Below, in pieces: positions 1 to 8,000 of a stretch of DNA of 32,000 nt (positions are counted from its first letter, which is position 1; every line of letters begins with the position of its first letter). The position numbers were made by a program, and so were the translations under genes. The stretch is from positions 62,601 through 94,600 of the forward strand of contig NW_008806293.1 in assembly GCF_000400465.1 (NCBI RefSeq). The letters are read 5' to 3'. This DNA comes from Wallemia ichthyophaga EXF-994. Taxonomy: Eukaryota > Fungi > Basidiomycota. The notes under the pieces were generated by a model. The model did not search any database. It was not told where the DNA came from and was given only the letters and a program-made list of their open reading frames with translations.

Positions 1-45
1 AAGTCCCATTAGAGTAGAAAATCTATTTGTGTCAGAACGAGTCGC

Positions 46-1138
46 TTACTCTGGTTTTTTGGAGATAAATAACATCATCGGGGTGAAGAGTTTCTTTTGA
101 CCACCTTCGACGAGAGCATCAGCAGCGACCTTGAGTGATTCTCCAACTTCAAATGTACCCTTTGGTACAACGCCGAACCTCTCGAGTACCTTTATACCAT
201 TTTGAGTCACAAATTTACCAACGCTTGTCATTCTCCAGACTGTGAAAATATCCCACAAGTTTTGACATTTTCTGATATCTCCTTCTAATGGATAGTACCA
301 TGGTATAGGATCCGGTCTAGCTGCAAGGTCTTCCTCGTGGAGAATCTCGAACCCGACCTTTTTCAAAGCGTTACGGGCATTTTCAACGTTACGCATTTCT
401 GGTATACCATCGCCGACTTCAATTCCGTGAGCCACTCTCTTGTGCTCAGGGTTGCGTGGGTCCCATTCGTCGGTCATACACCATTCGCTGTGGAAAAATT
501 AGAATGGAGGAGGGTACTTGAAAGTGTACTTACTAGACACCAAAGATACCACCTGGCTTGAGGATCTTCTTAATTTCATTGTAAACACCCTCGAAGTTTG
601 GAGCGTGAACGGTAGCCTCGATAGCGTAGACAGCATCAAAAGAGTTTTCACCGAACTGTTCGGACAACTTCATGAAGTCACCCTTGACGAAATCAACTTT
701 ATCTTCAAGACCAGCTTTCTTTGTGTATTTTCTTGCTCTCGCGACTTGGAAAGCGTTGTTGTTCAGACCGACAATGTTGGCATCTGAGAAGGTAGCAATC
801 TCTCTGGCAGGGCCACCGACACCACAGCCGACATCCAAGACCTTCATGCCCTTCTTCAAACCGATGTTTGAGGACAAATAATGCTCATGTCTGGCCAAAG
901 CTTGATAGAAGCCCTCACCCTTGTAATATCTACAGAAGTGGAAGGAAGTGCCCCATCCGTACTCGTAGAGCTCAGTAGCGCCATCGTAGTAGCCGTTGAC
1001 GACATCTTTGTAGACGTCCAACCTGTTTTGACGATCGGTTTCTGAGTCGTTCGAAGAATCTTTTTGCCAGAAGTTGTTGTAATTCTCGATACCAGCGTTT
1101 GAGCGCTTTCCGTCGTCTTGCTTGTTGTAAGTTGACAT
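46..1138 (-). CDS. ERG6: Sterol 24-C-methyltransferase (2 exons; intron 488-533)
   Basis: [22 protein letters not shown] motif [26 protein letters not shown] and a C-terminal sterol-MT domain ([13 protein letters not shown]). Intron GTAAGT...CACAG joins ...GIFGV-Y-EWCMTD. First ATG is at 1138; the ORF-track start at 1171 is TTG. Confidence 0.95.
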
Positions 1139-1218
1139 TTTACGTTGTGAGAGTTTGAGACCAAGACTCAACTAAATAATCAGCGCACTTGAGCTCGAAC
1201 TTCTAGGCGGGAAATTAA

Positions 1219-2062
<844 letters not shown>

Positions 2063-2103
2063 CTTATCTATAAAGTGGTGATTACATATATGTAAATTAT
2101 TCT

Positions 2104-2729
2104 TTAATCCTTTTTCTCCGTTTTGTCGGATGATTCAGTATTTTGGGCTTTGTCACTCGACTGGGCATCTTGATTAGCATTTTGATCTGTACCTGGTACA
2201 TCTTCCGTCTTCTCAGTTTCAATCCTACTACTCTGTTCAGCTTGTATTCTCTCAAAGGCCCTAACGACCTTTGATTGCAAGTAATGACTGTACGGCTGTG
2301 TATCTGGCTTGACTTTGTTTAAGTGACTTCTTCTTTGAGGTTTCTTTGGTTGGGCCTCTGCTTTCGGATCTACCTTAGGCTGAGGAGGGCTATTCATTTT
2401 GAATAGGTGATCATAGTTGTGTTGAATATCATCTAAACTAGCCTCTCGCTTGACATTCAAAATCAAATGAGCCTCATCAAGCGTCATCTTGAGCTGCTTT
2501 GTTGCGTGCTGAGATGGATTGGCTTGTGAAGCATTTTTATCATTTGACTGTTGAGAAGGTTCATTCAAATCAGGCTTGTGGGTTGCGTTAGAGACTGCTT
2601 GCCGACCCATTTCCATGAATGCCTTCCCGAAGGCTTTGCTAGCACCGAAAGTGACCTGGGCTATTAATTTCGGCAGATTAGACTAATAATTGGTCAGATT
2701 TCGTATAATACACAGATAGCACTCACCAT
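2104..2729 (-). CDS. PAM16: Mitochondrial import motor J-like protein Pam16/Tim16 (exon 1 coding part is ATG only; intron 2683-2726)
   Basis: MSNLPKLIAQVTFGASKAFGKAFMEMGRQAV N-terminus and J-like domain MTLDEAHLILNV...YDHLFKMN...SHYLQSKVVRAFERI. The intron has a GTGAGT donor, CTGAC branch and TAG acceptor (44 nt), and rejoins in frame with ORF 2104-2616. Confidence 0.88.
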
Positions 2730-4977
2730 GGATGCTTTGAAAATGGACGTTGAAGATCAAGTGATACGCAAGTTGGAGAAATCTGAATTATTGAGGGATT
2801 TAAATGTTTCTAAGGATTTCAATGATTTTAGTGAATACACCAGCAAATTAGGCGTTTTAAGCCTGTCAAATGTAGAGTTGAATCATCAATTCAATCAATT
2901 ACTATCAAACTATAATCAGCACGATAAGACTTATGATTTAAAAGCTGAATTGATTGAATTGAAGCAGCTGAAGGCTTATAATCATTGGCTATTAGATCTG
3001 ATTCAGTTGGGGAAACTACTCGATGACTTGGCTATTAATTTTGATATCAATAAATACAATTCTATCAGATTGATGGAGCTTGAGCTTCTGAGAAAGTACA
3101 ATAACCATGAATATATTTCAAAACTCAAGCAAAACACGTTCAATAAGATCAAAGATGACTTGATTTCAAGCTTGGTTAATGATCTTACTCGATTAGGATA
3201 CCCAAATGATGAAATCAGACCCCTAAACCTTGAAAATTACCCTTCATTTACTCTCAACCTTAGTAGATTGAATGAATTTGATATAGAGACGTGCAAAATT
3301 GATGATACTGATTACAGATGCCTTGTCGTTCAAGCCTTTGTTGAACCTATCAGAATTAGATTCGCTTACCACTTTGAAAGTAACTTATACACCAGCAAGC
3401 TCAATAAACCTGAATATTATCTCAATTATATCACTGACAACATCATCAAACATAGGAGATTTCTTTCTTCCGAAATACAGCACCTCACCCCGCATGATAA
3501 CACCCTGAATAGCTACGTCGATCAGCTTATTCAACTAACTAAGGGCAAGTTTGTCAGATCTATACCTTCTATGCTCGGTGTTCCGAATATACTCACTCAC
3601 ACTATCCATCAATGTCTGAAATTTGATCAATTCCTTCTCTCGCATGAGCTATCCACAAATGCTGTTATCTCTAATGCCTTTTTGAATAATGGCGATTGGT
3701 TCAACAGCTGGTTGGATTCTGAAACCAGGCTCGCGAACGACACGTTCCAATCCATTATCAGTTCAACGAATGCCTGGTCATTTATTCAGCAGACGTCTTG
3801 CAGTGATAATGAAGATGACTTCTCTCTAGATACGAAATCTTCTATCAACTGCACTGTTTCAGCTCAGAAAACTTTGGATCTGATTGAGGCAATCACGGGT
3901 GAGTATTTCCTAAGCAACATAACATCTTCTGAACAAAGTCTAGATAGGTACAGACCACTTCCATCGCTCCAACAGCGCGCCAATTTCTTAATTAAAGTGC
4001 AGCTTCCGTTGATAGAAAAATACGGTAACAAATTGACAATGTCTCTGGACGCATTTGAGTCTTATTCATCTACATTCATAGCAGCAATGTCAAGTGTACC
4101 GGGCTCGTTTGGAGAGAAGCATAAATCTAATCAGGAAGATTCACTAGGATCGTCCACCCTCACTAAACTTATCAAAATCATATTAAATGCGCAATATTTT
4201 AGTCAAGTAATATCTGACTTGGGTGAAGATATCTTTTTTTTGGAACTGTGGGATCATTTCACAGCCTCCTCACCAACTGACAACGGTACATTTGAGAAGA
4301 CCATTTTTTCAGAACTCGCGAGCATGTTTAATACTCTATCCCAACGCGCCCAAACCATTTTGATTGGCCATACAGCTTCATCAGTAATGCTTTCGTTCGA
4401 CGACTATCTTAAATCGAGACTGTGGAATCTAGACATACAACCTGAAAAAGACGAATATAGTCAGGAGCTGTCAAAATCTTACAGTATCTTGAAGCATCAC
4501 TTAGTTGTGATACATGAAGAGCTATCTTACAGTTACAGAATTGTAACAAAGGTGCTGATCAAAGAGATATCAAATACGGTGATGCAGTCGATTCGACGGA
4601 GTATATTTGAGCTGCGTCAACAATTTTCTCATCCCTCCAGCCAACAATTCTTAAATGACGTTATCAACTTTACCAAACTAAACACACCCCATTCAGACAT
4701 AACATTCAACTCGTTTATACCATTGATAGATCGCCTCATTCTACTCAGTCTACCTTCCAAACAAACAGATGAGAACTTGAAGGAGAGAACGCTGTCGAAA
4801 GCGATGCAATACGCATGGGAGGATGATTCAACACATTACAACAGATGGTGCCGTCAATTACATCTCAATGATCTGGCTATGGTGGGGTGTGCCGGTAATT
4901 TCGAGGACAGACGGTTTACAGTCGATCACGTCGAAGCTCAACGTATTCTCAGAATGAGAGTAGAGTGCTGGAGGTGA
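2728..4977 (+). CDS. TIP20: RINT-1/TIP20 family tethering protein (Dsl1/NRZ complex); probable in-frame intron 3899-3943
   Basis: 749-aa ORF with FVEPIRIRFAYHFESNLYTSKLNKPEYY, ILTHTIHQCLKFD, WFNSWLDSE, ITDRYRPLP and ILNAQYFSQVISDLGEDIFFLELW, all characteristic of RINT1/TIP20. The start could alternatively be the ATG at 2743. Confidence 0.85.
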   Translation: MDALKMDVEDQVIRKLEKSELLRDLNVSKDFNDFSEYTSKLGVLSLSNVELNHQFNQLLSNYNQHDKTYDLKAELIELKQLKAYNHWLLDLIQLGKLLDDLAINFDINKYNSIRLMELELLRKYNNHEYISKLKQNTFNKIKDDLISSLVNDLTRLGYPNDEIRPLNLENYPSFTLNLSRLNEFDIETCKIDDTDYRCLVVQAFVEPIRIRFAYHFESNLYTSKLNKPEYYLNYITDNIIKHRRFLSSEIQHLTPHDNTLNSYVDQLIQLTKGKFVRSIPSMLGVPNILTHTIHQCLKFDQFLLSHELSTNAVISNAFLNNGDWFNSWLDSETRLANDTFQSIISSTNAWSFIQQTSCSDNEDDFSLDTKSSINCTVSAQKTLDLIEAITGEYFLSNITSSEQSLDRYRPLPSLQQRANFLIKVQLPLIEKYGNKLTMSLDAFESYSSTFIAAMSSVPGSFGEKHKSNQEDSLGSSTLTKLIKIILNAQYFSQVISDLGEDIFFLELWDHFTASSPTDNGTFEKTIFSELASMFNTLSQRAQTILIGHTASSVMLSFDDYLKSRLWNLDIQPEKDEYSQELSKSYSILKHHLVVIHEELSYSYRIVTKVLIKEISNTVMQSIRRSIFELRQQFSHPSSQQFLNDVINFTKLNTPHSDITFNSFIPLIDRLILLSLPSKQTDENLKERTLSKAMQYAWEDDSTHYNRWCRQLHLNDLAMVGCAGNFEDRRFTVDHVEAQRILRMRVECWR

Positions 4978-5099
4978 TTACATAGTACACATAGAATCAC
5001 TTAGAATTTAAACCTATTTTCTCTGATAATTAAATTATGCATTATACACTGCCAAATCTACATGCTGTGCCTTCTCAATCTCTGACCATTACCACCGAG

Positions 5100-8000
5100 A
5101 TGTCCGCGGAAGAACTAAAGGGAATATTCCCACTCACAAAGCCATTGCCTTTACCGTCTAATAATACACCTCTTTCTAAAATCGTTGATCTCCAATTCGA
5201 AGAAGAGTTATCGAAAAATCCCACCAATCTGCGTGTCTGGTTCAGCTACATCGACGTCGTGAACTCCAAGCTTGAATTATTGACCCCAATTGAAGAGGAT
5301 GACAGTATATCCACGTCTACCAAGGAGTTACTGGGACCGCTCGCAACGCCAGATAGACGCACCATTTATCAGACTCTTACAAGTATTTACGAGAGAGCTC
5401 TCGGCGTATTTCCATTTAATTATCGGCTGTGGTATGCCTACCTGCTCATGAGGTTGTCATTTTTAACTGAAAACATCACCCACGACGATATCAACCAGCT
5501 GAGGAACAACAGAAGACGCTTAGTAAGAGGGCAGCCGTTGATCGATTTGGAGAAAGGTGACGAGAGGATCCCTTGGAAGGAGGTGTCTGAGGCTAACTAC
5601 TTGGATGGATTGATCGGCGAGTCTGAGTGGAAGGCCACTGCTGCCGTTTTTGAAAGATGCCTATCATGGCTACAGAGCGTGGGTGTGTATCGAAATCTAA
5701 TTCCTCTGTAACATATCCAAACAGATGCCACGTATATGGTTGTTGTATTTATCACTACTCAGCAATCCGGCCTGCCCACCCCGTTTAGGGCGCACACATG
5801 CTAGGCGTACGTTCGATAGAGCGCTGCGCACCCTTCCCCCTTCGCTACATATGCGTATTTGGCCAGCCTATCTCAATTGGGCCAAGTCGATGGGTGGACA
5901 TTGTCTGACCATCATTTGGAGAAGGTATTTGGCAGTTGATCCATACCCAATCGAGACCTACATTCAACTTTTACTAAATGGCGAGAAGCCTTCGAGTAGG
6001 GCCCTCGAGGCTTGTAAGCTTCTGCTCAAACTTTCAAGATTGTCAAGAGAGAATCACTATGTGTCTCCTCAAGGTAAAAGTCCCTACATGTTACTTAATG
6101 ATTGGTTGGAGGTTTGCTCCGAGTACGCTGACATTGTCGGCGTTGATGTCGAAAAGGCGACTGCGTTGAAACCGGTACAAGTCGGGGGACGACACAATGA
6201 AATGGATAAAATTACAGAAAGCATTTCAAAACAACCCGAAGACGAGAAGCCGGCTGGTATTGATTCAAATGTTGATGCTGATATTGACCCTTCAAATGAT
6301 CAGAAATTAGATGTTGATTATTTGGTACGCAAAGATGGTTTGTCAATATACAAAGACCAAGCTGGTAGATTGTGGACTGGATTGGCCACATACTGGATCC
6401 GTCGTGGAGAGTTCGAAAAAGCTCGTCAAGTGTTCGAAACGGCGATTAAGTCAGTGGTCACAGTCAGAGATTTCACGCAAGTGTTTGATGCTTATGCGGA
6501 GTTCAATGAGCAATTAGTAACATCTTTAATGGACGCCTTAGCAGATATAGATGATGATGAAAAAAATGATCTGGAGGAAGACCTGGATAGTAATATGCAA
6601 TCATTCGAGCATTTAATGGACAGGCGACCAATTTTAGTAAACGATGTAATGTTACGTCGTAATCCGAACGATGTCAACGAGTGGCAGAAGCGCATTGCAT
6701 TGTTCGACAATGACGACGAAAAGATTGTTAATACATACACAGATGCTATACTCACCATAAAACCCAAACAAGCAGTCGGATTTGGAGATCTTTATGCAAA
6801 CTTCGCAAAGTATTACGAATCCAAAGGAGATATAGGTAGTTCCCGTCAAATCTTTGAAAAGGCAATTGATGTAAATTACCGCCGTATCGACGAGCTCGCA
6901 GAAATCTGGATTCAATGGTCAGAGATGGAATTGCGACATGATAACTTTAACGAAGCGGTGAAGGTGATGGAAAGAGCAACGACTACACCAAAAAACACAA
7001 AGGTGGACTATTATGATGAGAGTTTGTCTCCACAGAGGCGATTATTCAAATCGTTGAAAATGTGGTCATTCTATGTCGATATTATGGAGAGTATTGGAAG
7101 TGTTGAATCTACCAAAGCAGTTTATGATAAGATTTTGGATCTAAAAATAGCCAATGCACAGATAATCATCAACTATGCTTTGTTTTTGGAGGAAAACGAT
7201 TACTTCGATGACAGTTTCAAGGTCTATGAACGCGGTGTGGACGCATTCACTTACCCTGTCGCATTTGAGCTTTGGAACGTATACTTGTCAAAGTTCTTGA
7301 AGCGTTATGTAAGTGAATGGACAAATTATATAGTATACTAACAAGATTAAAAGGGAGGATCTAAGCTGGAACTGGCGCGTGACTTGTTCGAACAAGCTGT
7401 TGAGGGAATACCAAGCAAATTCGCCAAACCAATATTTCTGATGTTTGGTAAATTAGAAGAGGAATATGGACTTGCAAGGAGAGCCATTAGAGTTTATGAA
7501 CGTGCTACACAAGCGGTCTCGGATAAAGACAAGTTTGAGGTGCGCAATTACACTAGATGACAATAATATTCTAACAGCAGTTGCGCAGATGTACAAGATA
7601 TTGATTGCAAAAGTAGCTATGAATTTTGGTCTCGCAGCTACGCGACCTGTCTACGAAAAGAGTTTAGAAGAGTTACCGGATAAGTCTGCGATAGTAATGG
7701 GCTTACGCTTCGCAAATCTTGAAAGGAAGCTCGGAGAGATTGACAGAGCGAGATCAATTTACGCGCATACTTCGCAGTTTTGTGATACAAGAATTCAAAA
7801 GGAGTTCTGGAATGAGTGGAACCAATTCGAAATTGATCACGGTAGCGAGGATACATTCAGAGAGTTCTTACGTATTCGTAGATCGGTACAGGCGTCATTT
7901 AACACAGAGGCACATTATTTGGCAGCGCAATCGCTGCACAACAACGCGAGCAAGTCGGGCGAAGATGGTGGGGAAGAAGAGGCGACTGCTATTAATGACC

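What the first reader, a model, noticed from the sequence alone, without database searches (positions are those of the whole stretch)
2683..2745. Divergent PAM16 and RINT1/TIP20 share one CATG palindrome as interlocked start codons
In CCATGG (2726-2731), ATG 2728-2730 opens the 749-aa RINT1/TIP20 ORF on +. The complementary ATG (2729-2727) on - is followed at once by a textbook intron (GTGAGT...CTGAC...TAG, 44 nt) that splices in frame into the Pam16 N-terminus. There is therefore no intergenic DNA. Each gene's promoter and 5'UTR must lie inside the other gene, and the two mRNAs must overlap antisense at their 5' ends. Even with the alternative RINT1 ATG at 2743, only 13 bp separate the start codons. 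Both families are conserved housekeeping genes (mitochondrial import motor; ER tethering), so this suggests extreme genome compaction or coupled regulation through transcriptional interference.
Basis: partly seen in the sequence, partly recalled or inferred. Interest (0 to 1): 0.72.

Follow-up and report, generated by a model that had tools for sequence, protein, structure and literature searches.

The report
Head-to-head PAM16 and RINT1 start codons
In the very compact genome of the salt-loving fungus Wallemia ichthyophaga, two housekeeping genes on opposite strands start only 13 bases apart (11-13 across the genus); the shared CATG is a lineage-specific coincidence on top of that real, already annotated arrangement of a known kind.

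Summary
The window is Wallemia ichthyophaga. The sequence observation is correct: CCATGG sits at 2726-2731, with ATG 2729-2727 (-) followed by a 44-nt intron (2726-2683) that joins in frame to the Pam16 N-terminus. ATG 2728 (+) opens a 749-codon RINT1/TIP20 ORF. The one-codon PAM16 first exon is real. The same splice is seen in RNA-derived contigs of W. mellicola and Laccaria bicolor, and ATG|GYGAG and the YAG acceptor are kept in five Wallemia lineages. The exact 193-aa product is already in GenBank, where the two annotated CDSs overlap by 2 bp. The 'interlocked' RINT1 ATG is not conserved. W. hederae and W. mellicola lack it, and in another Wallemia it is out of frame. The RINT1 start kept in every lineage is ATG 2743 (MDVED...), which leaves an 11-13 bp spacer. 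In W. mellicola, spliced PAM16 RNA reaches at least 16 nt upstream of its ATG and so covers the RINT1 start codon; a 5' antisense overlap of at least 5 nt follows by inference. No RINT1 transcript or TSS data were obtainable, and regulatory coupling is untested. This is an extreme but ordinary-in-kind product of genome compaction combined with an ancient start-codon intron. Interest is low to moderate.

The parts
2727..2729 (-). PAM16 (TIM16) start codon. It is the entire coding part of exon 1.
   Evidence: Sequence. ATG|GYGAG is conserved in all Wallemia loci. The orthologous ATG is joined directly to codon 2 in W. mellicola RNA contigs L011 and L012 and in Laccaria L018. The N-terminus MS.(L)PK matches other basidiomycete Pam16 proteins.
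2683..2726 (-). PAM16 start-codon intron: 44 nt, phase 0, GTGAGT...CTGAC (2697-2693)...TAG.
   Evidence: The interior diverges between species while the ends are kept, and length is 44-47 nt in Wallemia. The orthologous intron is removed in RNA. Transcript-verified neighbouring NUDT21 introns are 41-45 nt.
2104..2682 (-). PAM16 exon 2 (codons 2-193 plus TAA stop at 2104-2106).
   Evidence: The translated product is 193 aa. Pfam PF03656 E=8e-20, covering residues 8-98. The exact sequence is P0066 in NCBI/UniRef on 15 contigs.
2726..2731 (.). CCATGG palindrome holding the PAM16 ATG and a lineage-specific RINT1-strand ATG.
   Evidence: CATG is present only in W. ichthyophaga and L003, and absent in W. 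hederae and W. mellicola.
2728..2730 (+). Upstream in-frame ATG on the RINT1 strand (would add MDALK). GenBank uses it as the CDS start. It is not conserved.
   Evidence: P0081/EOQ99235.1 starts MDALKMDVED. Context is CTCACCATGG. It is absent or out of frame in the other lineages.
2732..2740 (+). Second upstream ATG on the RINT1 strand, out of frame (ATGCTTTGA, ML*).
2730..2742 (.). 13-bp spacer between the PAM16 ATG and the conserved RINT1 ATG (11-13 bp across the genus).
   Evidence: The W. hederae GenBank gene calls place the two starts 12 bp apart.
2743..2745 (+). Conserved RINT1/TIP20 start codon (MDVEDQVI...).
   Evidence...GACGTCCAT is invariant in all Wallemia loci. Orthologues start MDVE[D/E]QVI. 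Context is TTGAAAATGG.
2743..4977 (+). RINT1/TIP20 coding region. It is 729 aa after removal of the intron at 3899-3943, or 734 aa if ATG 2728 is used.
   Evidence: Pfam PF04437 E=1e-64. The intron is 45 nt, phase 1, GTGAGT..CTGAAC..TAG, matches the NCBI model ...AITDRYRP..., and corresponds to a frame-breaking 44-nt intron in W. mellicola.
2704..2710 (+). TATAATA inside the PAM16 intron, 39 nt upstream of ATG 2743. A speculative TATA-like element for RINT1.
   Evidence: Sequence only. Similar AT-rich strings are present in W. mellicola and L001 but not clearly in L003 or W. hederae. Not tested.

Best explanation
This is a compaction-driven head-to-head gene pair in Wallemia ichthyophaga.

PAM16 on the minus strand has an ancient start-codon intron. 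Its first exon ends with the ATG at 2729-2727, a 44-nt intron is removed, and translation continues with SNLPK.

RINT1/TIP20 on the plus strand starts at the genus-wide conserved ATG at 2743, 13 bp away. In W. ichthyophaga a C happens to precede the PAM16 ATG. This creates an extra in-frame ATG at 2728 on the RINT1 strand, which gene finders pick, so GenBank shows a 2-bp CDS overlap. If the RINT1 TSS lies upstream of 2728, that ATG would merely add five residues (MDALK).

The spacer is far shorter than a core promoter. Each gene's initiation region must therefore lie in the other's transcribed sequence, and the two transcription units cross over at their 5' ends by a few to some tens of nucleotides.

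Shown: the sequence, the conservation, the splice in two relatives, and a PAM16 leader of at least 16 nt that covers the RINT1 start codon in W. mellicola.

Inferred: the same holds in W. ichthyophaga, RINT1 uses 2743, and the arrangement is a neutral or tolerated product of intergenic shrinkage rather than a regulatory device.
For: - Species and compaction: the RINT1 ORF is 98% identical to W. ichthyophaga EOQ99235.1. The genome is 9.6 Mb with 73.6% CDS.
- Neighbouring NCBI gene calls are also tight: 41 bp stop-to-stop, 122 bp from stop to the next start, and 233 bp for the next divergent pair.
- Splice: L011 and L012 join ...ATCTATG to TCAAAT... and also lack the NUDT21 introns. Laccaria RNA contig L018 joins ATG to GCTTCC across a 64-nt intron. 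The distant relative L015 keeps ATG|GTAAGT...TAG|TCCAAT.
- N-terminal alignment with MSAPK / MASPK orthologues.
- The JGI model P0070 uses the same structure independently.
- RINT1 start: GACGTCCAT is invariant and the spacer is 11-13 bp, while CATG occurs in only 2 of 5 lineages and is out of frame in one of them.
- Out-of-frame upstream ATGs lie close to the RINT1 start in L003 (-14, -36), W. hederae (-51) and W. ichthyophaga (-11). This fits a very short RINT1 leader.
- Chance: 19% of ATGs in the window are CATG.
- Precedents: start-codon introns are an over-represented class in short conserved proteins (PMC1626468). Overlapping transcription is known in compact eukaryotic genomes.
Against: - There is no transcript or TSS evidence from W. 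ichthyophaga itself, and no RINT1 transcript from any Wallemia.
- ATG 2728 has a strong context (ACCATGG) and is fixed in all sampled W. ichthyophaga strains. It could be the used start if the TSS lies upstream of it.
- Synonymous sites next to the junction are not more conserved than elsewhere. There is therefore no positive sequence signature of promoter elements embedded in the partner gene, though four lineages give low power.
- The W. ichthyophaga gene models trace to a single ab initio prediction (GeneMark-ES), which was propagated by MAKER to the strains.
Confidence: 0.8

Rival explanations
1. RINT1 is translated from ATG 2728, so the two CDSs overlap by 2 bp at CATG. The interlock is a selected device that couples the two genes through mutually exclusive initiation or transcriptional interference.
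For: The GenBank reference and strain annotations use exactly this model. ATG 2728 is in frame, in an ACCATGG context, and identical in all W. ichthyophaga loci examined. The close pairing of the two genes is conserved across the genus.
Against: - The CATG is absent in W. hederae and W. mellicola and out of frame in L003. It is therefore not what is conserved.
- The MDALK extension has no counterpart in any orthologue.
- A CATG arises by chance at about 1 in 5 ATGs.
- The annotations are ab initio calls that take the first in-frame ATG.
- No expression data link the two genes.
Confidence: 0.12
2. The transcripts do not overlap. Both genes use ultra-short leaders that begin inside the 11-13 bp spacer, and translation runs from near-leaderless mRNAs, so the promoter is shared but the transcripts only abut.
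For: The W. mellicola RNA contigs end only 10 and 16 nt upstream of the PAM16 ATG. Upstream ATGs very close to the RINT1 start in three lineages suggest a very short RINT1 leader.
Against: The 16-nt leader in L011 is longer than the 11-nt W. mellicola spacer and includes the complement of the RINT1 start codon. It is contiguous with the splice junction, so it comes from PAM16-sense RNA. Any RINT1 mRNA must contain that codon, so an overlap of at least 5 nt follows.
Confidence: 0.06
3. PAM16 is not spliced in W. ichthyophaga and starts at ATG 2616 (170 aa) or at a non-AUG codon. The apparent intron is a coincidence.
For: Prokaryote-style gene callers and one NCBI strain model give the 170-aa product (P0001, P0067).
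Against: - The 23 residues lost are conserved (SNLPKLIAQVTFGASKAFGKAF) and lie inside the Pfam Pam16 match.
- Exon-2 sequence upstream of ATG 2616 is conserved as coding, while the intron interior is not.
- The orthologous splice is seen in RNA in two species.
- An in-frame stop lies immediately upstream of exon 2.
Confidence: 0.02

Closest known systems
Start-codon introns: phase-0 introns between codons 1 and 2 (Nielsen and Wernersson 2006, PMC1626468)
   Same: PAM16 has a phase-0 intron directly after ATG, and it encodes a short, conserved protein without a signal peptide. This is the class described. The ATG|G at the exon end matches the usual exon-end G... actually the exon ends in ATG and the intron begins with GT. 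The intron is ancient, being shared by Wallemia and Laccaria.
   Different: Here the one-codon coding exon sits 13 bp from another gene's start codon, so the whole first exon lies within or next to the neighbour's 5' end.
Bidirectional (divergent, head-to-head) gene pairs with shared promoter regions
   Same: The two genes are on opposite strands with adjacent 5' ends, and the pairing is conserved across a genus. The neighbouring NUDT21/ERG6 pair (233 bp) and Laccaria RPA43/PAM16 (95 bp, with a single RNA contig spanning both) are ordinary examples.
   Different: The ATG-to-ATG distance of 11-13 bp is far below the usual 100-1000 bp. That leaves no room for a nucleosome-free promoter between the genes, so the initiation sites must cross.
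Overlapping transcription in compacted eukaryotic genomes: microsporidia and nucleomorphs (Williams et al. 2005 PNAS; Corradi et al. 2008; cited in PMC3629993)
   Same: Shrinking intergenic DNA forces transcripts to begin or end inside neighbouring genes. Wallemia also shows 3' overlap, because the PAM16 and NUDT21 mRNAs assemble into one contig.
   Different: Wallemia is a free-living basidiomycete with normal intron density (2.4 per gene). It is not a reduced parasite or an endosymbiont remnant.
GenBank annotation of W. ichthyophaga EXF-994 and 21 strains (RINT1 EOQ99235.1; Pam16 193 aa)
   Different: The annotation is an uncommented ab initio call. I found no paper discussing this gene pair.

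Membership tests
Pam16/Tim16 (Pfam PF03656) | Profile match above the curated cut-off | tested here: met
   71.6 bits against a 30.3 cut-off, E=8e-20, residues 8-98 on profile positions 5-86.
Pam16/Tim16 (Pfam PF03656) | Conserved N-terminal hydrophobic segment followed by a J-like domain that lacks the HPD tripeptide of true J proteins (the feature itself is stated from established knowledge of Pam16) | tested here: met
   MSNLPKLIAQVTFGASKAFGKAF aligns with MSAPKIIVQILVTGAQIFGKAL and similar orthologue N-termini. There is no HPD in the 193-aa product.
RINT1/TIP20 (Pfam PF04437) | Profile match above the curated cut-off over most of the domain | tested here: met
   219.6 bits against a 30 cut-off, E=1e-64, residues 201-716 on profile positions 3-502 of 514. 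The GenBank name is RAD50-interacting protein 1.
Start-codon intron class | Phase-0 spliceosomal intron exactly between codon 1 (ATG) and codon 2, removed in mRNA | tested here: met
   Removal is seen in RNA-derived contigs of the orthologues in W. mellicola and Laccaria bicolor. In W. ichthyophaga itself it rests on homology, splice signals and the in-frame stop, not on its own RNA.
Bidirectional / divergent gene pair | Opposite-strand neighbours with 5' ends adjacent (<1 kb) | tested here: met
   Start codons are 13 bp apart, and 11-13 bp in the genus.
Bidirectional / divergent gene pair | Mapped TSSs, a shared promoter and co-regulation | not testable with these tools
   No CAGE, 5'RACE or stranded RNA-seq was accessible. 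The only data are the 5' ends of two W. mellicola RNA contigs, at -16 and -10.
Genes with overlapping coding sequences | Both overlapping codons are actually translated | tested here: inconclusive
   The 2-bp CDS overlap exists only if ATG 2728 is used. Conservation favours ATG 2743. There are no proteomic or ribosome-profiling data.
5' sense-antisense overlapping transcripts | Transcribed regions of the two genes share nucleotides | tested here: inconclusive
   Half is shown in W. mellicola, where spliced PAM16 RNA covers the RINT1 start codon (L011 = L010 4985-5003, CAT at 4987-4989). An overlap of at least 5 nt follows only by inference, because no RINT1 transcript was recovered. Nothing was tested in W. 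ichthyophaga.

The most novel reading that the evidence does not exclude
The 11-13 bp head-to-head spacing is maintained by selection across Wallemia because the two essential genes share one crossing initiation zone. Polymerases loading for PAM16 and for RINT1 would compete, or the short 5' sense-antisense duplex that covers both start codons would tune translation or stability. In W. ichthyophaga the CATG would then add an alternative RINT1 N-terminus that depends on TSS choice.
Probability: 0.08. Interest if true: 0.6.

Novelty: new member of a known kind. Interest (0 to 1): 0.3.

Why it matters
It is a clean, conserved and extreme example of how far a free-living fungal genome can shrink a divergent intergenic region. 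At 11-13 bp between start codons, there is no room for a conventional promoter. That makes it a convenient natural test case for how RNA polymerase II initiates when both core promoters must sit inside transcribed or coding DNA.

It is also a practical annotation lesson. Start-codon-only exons and tight spacing caused several wrong public models at this locus:
- W. hederae Pam16 is mis-spliced.
- W. hederae RINT1 is fused to SYF1.
- W. mellicola strain models start MVTQV.
- RINT1 has no gene call at this locus in the W. mellicola CBS 633.66 assembly.

It does not reveal a new mechanism or family.

Tried and rejected
- Exact look-up of the 749-aa and 744-aa RINT1 ORFs found nothing. The annotated product is 734 aa because an in-frame intron is removed.
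- I searched for RNA-derived RINT1 contigs in order to map its 5' end. This used a homology search with the W. mellicola first exon, cluster members, look-ups of P0084 and P0087, and an exact look-up of a hand-spliced 728-aa W. mellicola RINT1. It found only genomic contigs or nothing.
- A look-up around a mid-window ORF, meant to obtain eukaryote-style gene calls for an intergenic-distance distribution, returned only prokaryote-style Logan calls. Context distances therefore come from L006-L009 only.
- I tested for extra synonymous-site conservation near the junction as a sign of embedded promoter elements. None was detected, with low power from four lineages.
- A search for the origin of runs ERR2309082 and ERR2309083 in the literature gave no hit. 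That these contigs derive from RNA is inferred from the removal of five introns in two adjacent genes.
- I rejected a hidden upstream PAM16 exon. The N-terminus MS.(L)PK already matches orthologue N-termini, and the RNA contigs show no further junction upstream.
- I rejected the intronic in-frame ATG seen in L001 and L002 (MQSNLPK, P0002) as a general start. It is absent from all other lineages, including W. mellicola CBS 633.66.
Full report
**Observation**

The stated features are all present.
- CCATGG occupies 2726-2731.
- The plus-strand ATG at 2728-2730 opens a 749-codon ORF that runs to 4977.
- The minus-strand ATG at 2729-2727 is followed by GTGAGT...CTGAC...TAG (2726-2683, 44 nt).
- After that comes TCT AAT CTG CCG..., which gives M|SNLPKLIAQVTFGASKAFGKAFMEMGRQAV...

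An in-frame TAG at 2685-2683 prevents any unspliced extension. The next in-frame ATG (2616) would delete 23 residues.

Pfam assigns the spliced 193-aa product to Pam16 (PF03656, 71.6 bits, residues 8-98). It assigns the plus-strand ORF to RINT1_TIP1 (PF04437, 219.6 bits).

**Source organism**

The window is Wallemia ichthyophaga.
- The RINT1 ORF is 98% identical to EOQ99235.1, 'RAD50-interacting protein 1' of strain EXF-994.
- The exact spliced Pam16 sequence (P0066) is in NCBI/UniRef on 15 contigs.

In those assemblies the gene calls are RINT1 2753-5002 (-) and PAM16 5001-5626 (+).

These models are not independent evidence. The reference was annotated ab initio with GeneMark-ES (PMC3849046). 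The strains were annotated with MAKER, using the reference proteome as evidence (PMC6738226).

**Is the PAM16 model right? Yes**

1. Other basidiomycete Pam16 proteins begin MSAPK, MASPK or MSLPR followed by the same hydrophobic helix.
2. Aligning the junction from five Wallemia lineages shows a clear pattern. The lineages are W. ichthyophaga, an unnamed species L003, W. hederae L004, W. mellicola L010, and a mellicola-like L001/L002.
   - ATG|GTGAG is conserved. L003 has ATG|GCGAG, a GC donor.
   - The acceptor is a conserved YAG, and intron length is 44-47 nt.
   - The intron interior is diverged, while exon 2 is conserved as coding.
3. Two Logan contigs from runs ERR2309082 and ERR2309083 (L011, L012) read ...TCCATCTATAAGATCTATG|TCAAATTTACC.... 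They match W. mellicola genome positions 4985-5003 joined to exon 2. The introns of the convergent NUDT21 gene are also removed, so the contigs derive from RNA.
4. The independent JGI model for W. mellicola CBS 633.66 (XP_006956954.1) also starts MSNLPK.
5. The structure is ancient.
   - A distant Wallemia-like metagenome contig (L015) has ATG|GTAAGT...(62 nt)...TAG|TCCAATTTACCA.
   - Laccaria bicolor has ATG|GTCAGT...(64 nt)...CAG|GCTTCC, and an RNA-derived contig (L018) shows the splice.

PAM16 therefore belongs to the described class of genes with a phase-0 'start-codon intron'. That class is over-represented in short conserved proteins (PMC1626468).

**Is ATG 2728 the RINT1 start? Probably not**

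On the RINT1 strand, all lineages keep ATGGACGT (MDVE[D/E]QVI.KL), which corresponds to window 2743.

The base before the PAM16 ATG varies:

| Lineage | Context of PAM16 ATG | Opposite-strand ATG |
|---|---|---|
| W. ichthyophaga | CATG | present, in frame |
| L003 | CATG | present, out of frame (ATGGTTGGTTGA) |
| W. hederae | AATG | none |
| W. mellicola group | TATG | none |

The palindrome is therefore a lineage-specific by-product. In this window 19% of all ATGs are preceded by C.

W. ichthyophaga even has a second, out-of-frame ATG at 2732 (ATGCTTTGA). Out-of-frame upstream ATGs also lie close to the RINT1 start in L003 (-14, -36) and W. hederae (-51). The simplest explanation is a very short RINT1 leader, which would place the TSS downstream of 2728. 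Tolerated uORFs cannot be excluded.

If the TSS does lie upstream of 2728, the strong ACCATGG context would give a harmless 5-residue extension.

The 749-aa figure also includes an in-frame 45-nt phase-1 intron at 3899-3943. The mature protein is 729 aa from ATG 2743, or 734 aa from ATG 2728.

**What is conserved and real**

The spacing between the two conserved start codons is the real feature:
- 13 bp in W. ichthyophaga
- 12 bp in L003 and W. hederae (the W. hederae GenBank calls are also 12 bp apart)
- 11 bp in the W. mellicola group

The distant relative L015 has about 100 bp to the upstream divergent ORF, whose identity as RINT1 was not confirmed. Laccaria has a different neighbour, RPA43, 95 bp away. 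The extreme spacing therefore arose within Wallemia. This fits the genus's compact genomes: 9.6 Mb, 514 genes per Mb and 73.6% CDS.

Neighbouring gaps in the NCBI calls are 41 bp (PAM16 and NUDT21, stop to stop), 122 bp (RINT1 stop to SYF1 start) and 233 bp (NUDT21 and ERG6, divergent).

**Transcript overlap**

In W. mellicola the spliced contig L011 begins 16 nt upstream of the PAM16 ATG. The spacer there is 11 nt, so the contig contains the complement of the RINT1 start codon plus 2 nt.

Those bases are contiguous with the splice junction within 19 nt, so they come from PAM16-sense RNA. Any RINT1 mRNA must include its own start codon. The two transcription units therefore overlap by at least 5 nt. 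This last step is an inference, because no RINT1 transcript was recovered.

The contigs stop at -16 and -10, which suggests a short PAM16 leader but does not prove one. For W. ichthyophaga the overlap rests on homology only.

I found no excess synonymous constraint near the junction: 0.63 against 0.53 overall for RINT1 codons 1-20, and 0.55 against 0.55 for PAM16 exon 2 codons 1-15. There is therefore no positive sequence evidence for conserved promoter elements inside the partner gene, and nothing bears on regulatory coupling.

**Comparison and novelty**

Each ingredient is known:
- start-codon introns (PMC1626468);
- divergent gene pairs;
- overlapping transcription in compact eukaryotic genomes (Williams et al. 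2005, cited in PMC3629993).

Both gene models are already in GenBank. What appears not to have been described is the genus-wide 11-13 bp start-to-start spacing, together with the RNA evidence that the PAM16 leader covers the RINT1 start codon.

I rate it a new member of a known kind, with low to moderate interest (0.3).

**Verdict**

The PAM16 intron, the compaction and the PAM16 5' leader reaching into RINT1 hold up.
- The 'interlocked start codons, no intergenic DNA' reading is a species-specific coincidence that ab initio annotation amplified.
- Coupled regulation is untested.

Noticed in passing
window 3899-3943 (+): The 749-codon RINT1 ORF contains an in-frame 45-nt phase-1 intron with no stop codon (GTGAGT..CTGAAC..TAG). 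Read as a plain ORF it adds 15 residues (GEYFLSNITSSEQSL). The orthologous 44-nt intron in W. mellicola breaks the frame.
   Followed up: yes
window 2062-2106; L010 5636-5679; L011 600-660: PAM16 and the convergent NUDT21/CFIm25 gene have stop codons only about 41 bp apart. In W. mellicola the two spliced mRNAs assemble into one RNA contig, so their 3' ends overlap.
   Followed up: partly
L004 (W. hederae GCA_004918325.1) 1-4644: The GenBank models at this locus look wrong. RINT1 is fused to SYF1 as a 1742-aa product. Pam16 (P0004, MVRKQITFG...) reads through the start-codon intron donor and uses another splice.
   Followed up: partly
L010 (W. mellicola CBS 633.66) 2648-5000; P0069: No RINT1 gene call is listed in the JGI-derived assembly, although an intact two-exon gene is present. 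Several W. mellicola strain models of Pam16 start MVTQVTFG instead of MSNLPK.
   Followed up: partly
L003 3886-3934 (Logan SRR25399871, unnamed Wallemia): The PAM16 start-codon intron uses a GC donor (ATG|GCGAGT) where the other lineages have GT.
   Followed up: no
L001 683-730, L002 16-63: In this mellicola-like lineage the intron contains an in-frame ATG just before the acceptor (..AAAATGCAG|TCA). Unspliced RNA could therefore still encode a near-normal Pam16 (MQSNLPK...). Prokaryote-style callers report that ORF (P0002).
   Followed up: partly
window 4977-5037 and 5037-7341 (+): SYF1 follows RINT1 in tandem, with only about 60 bp between the RINT1 stop and the first SYF1-frame ATG ORF in the window. 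The NCBI calls give 122 bp. SYF1 is split over several ORFs, so it contains introns.
   Followed up: no
L017 3905-4001 / L018 1935-2031 (Laccaria bicolor): RPA43 and PAM16 are divergent with 95 bp between their start codons. One RNA-derived contig spans both genes, so abutting or overlapping divergent 5' ends also occur in a non-compact basidiomycete.
   Followed up: no
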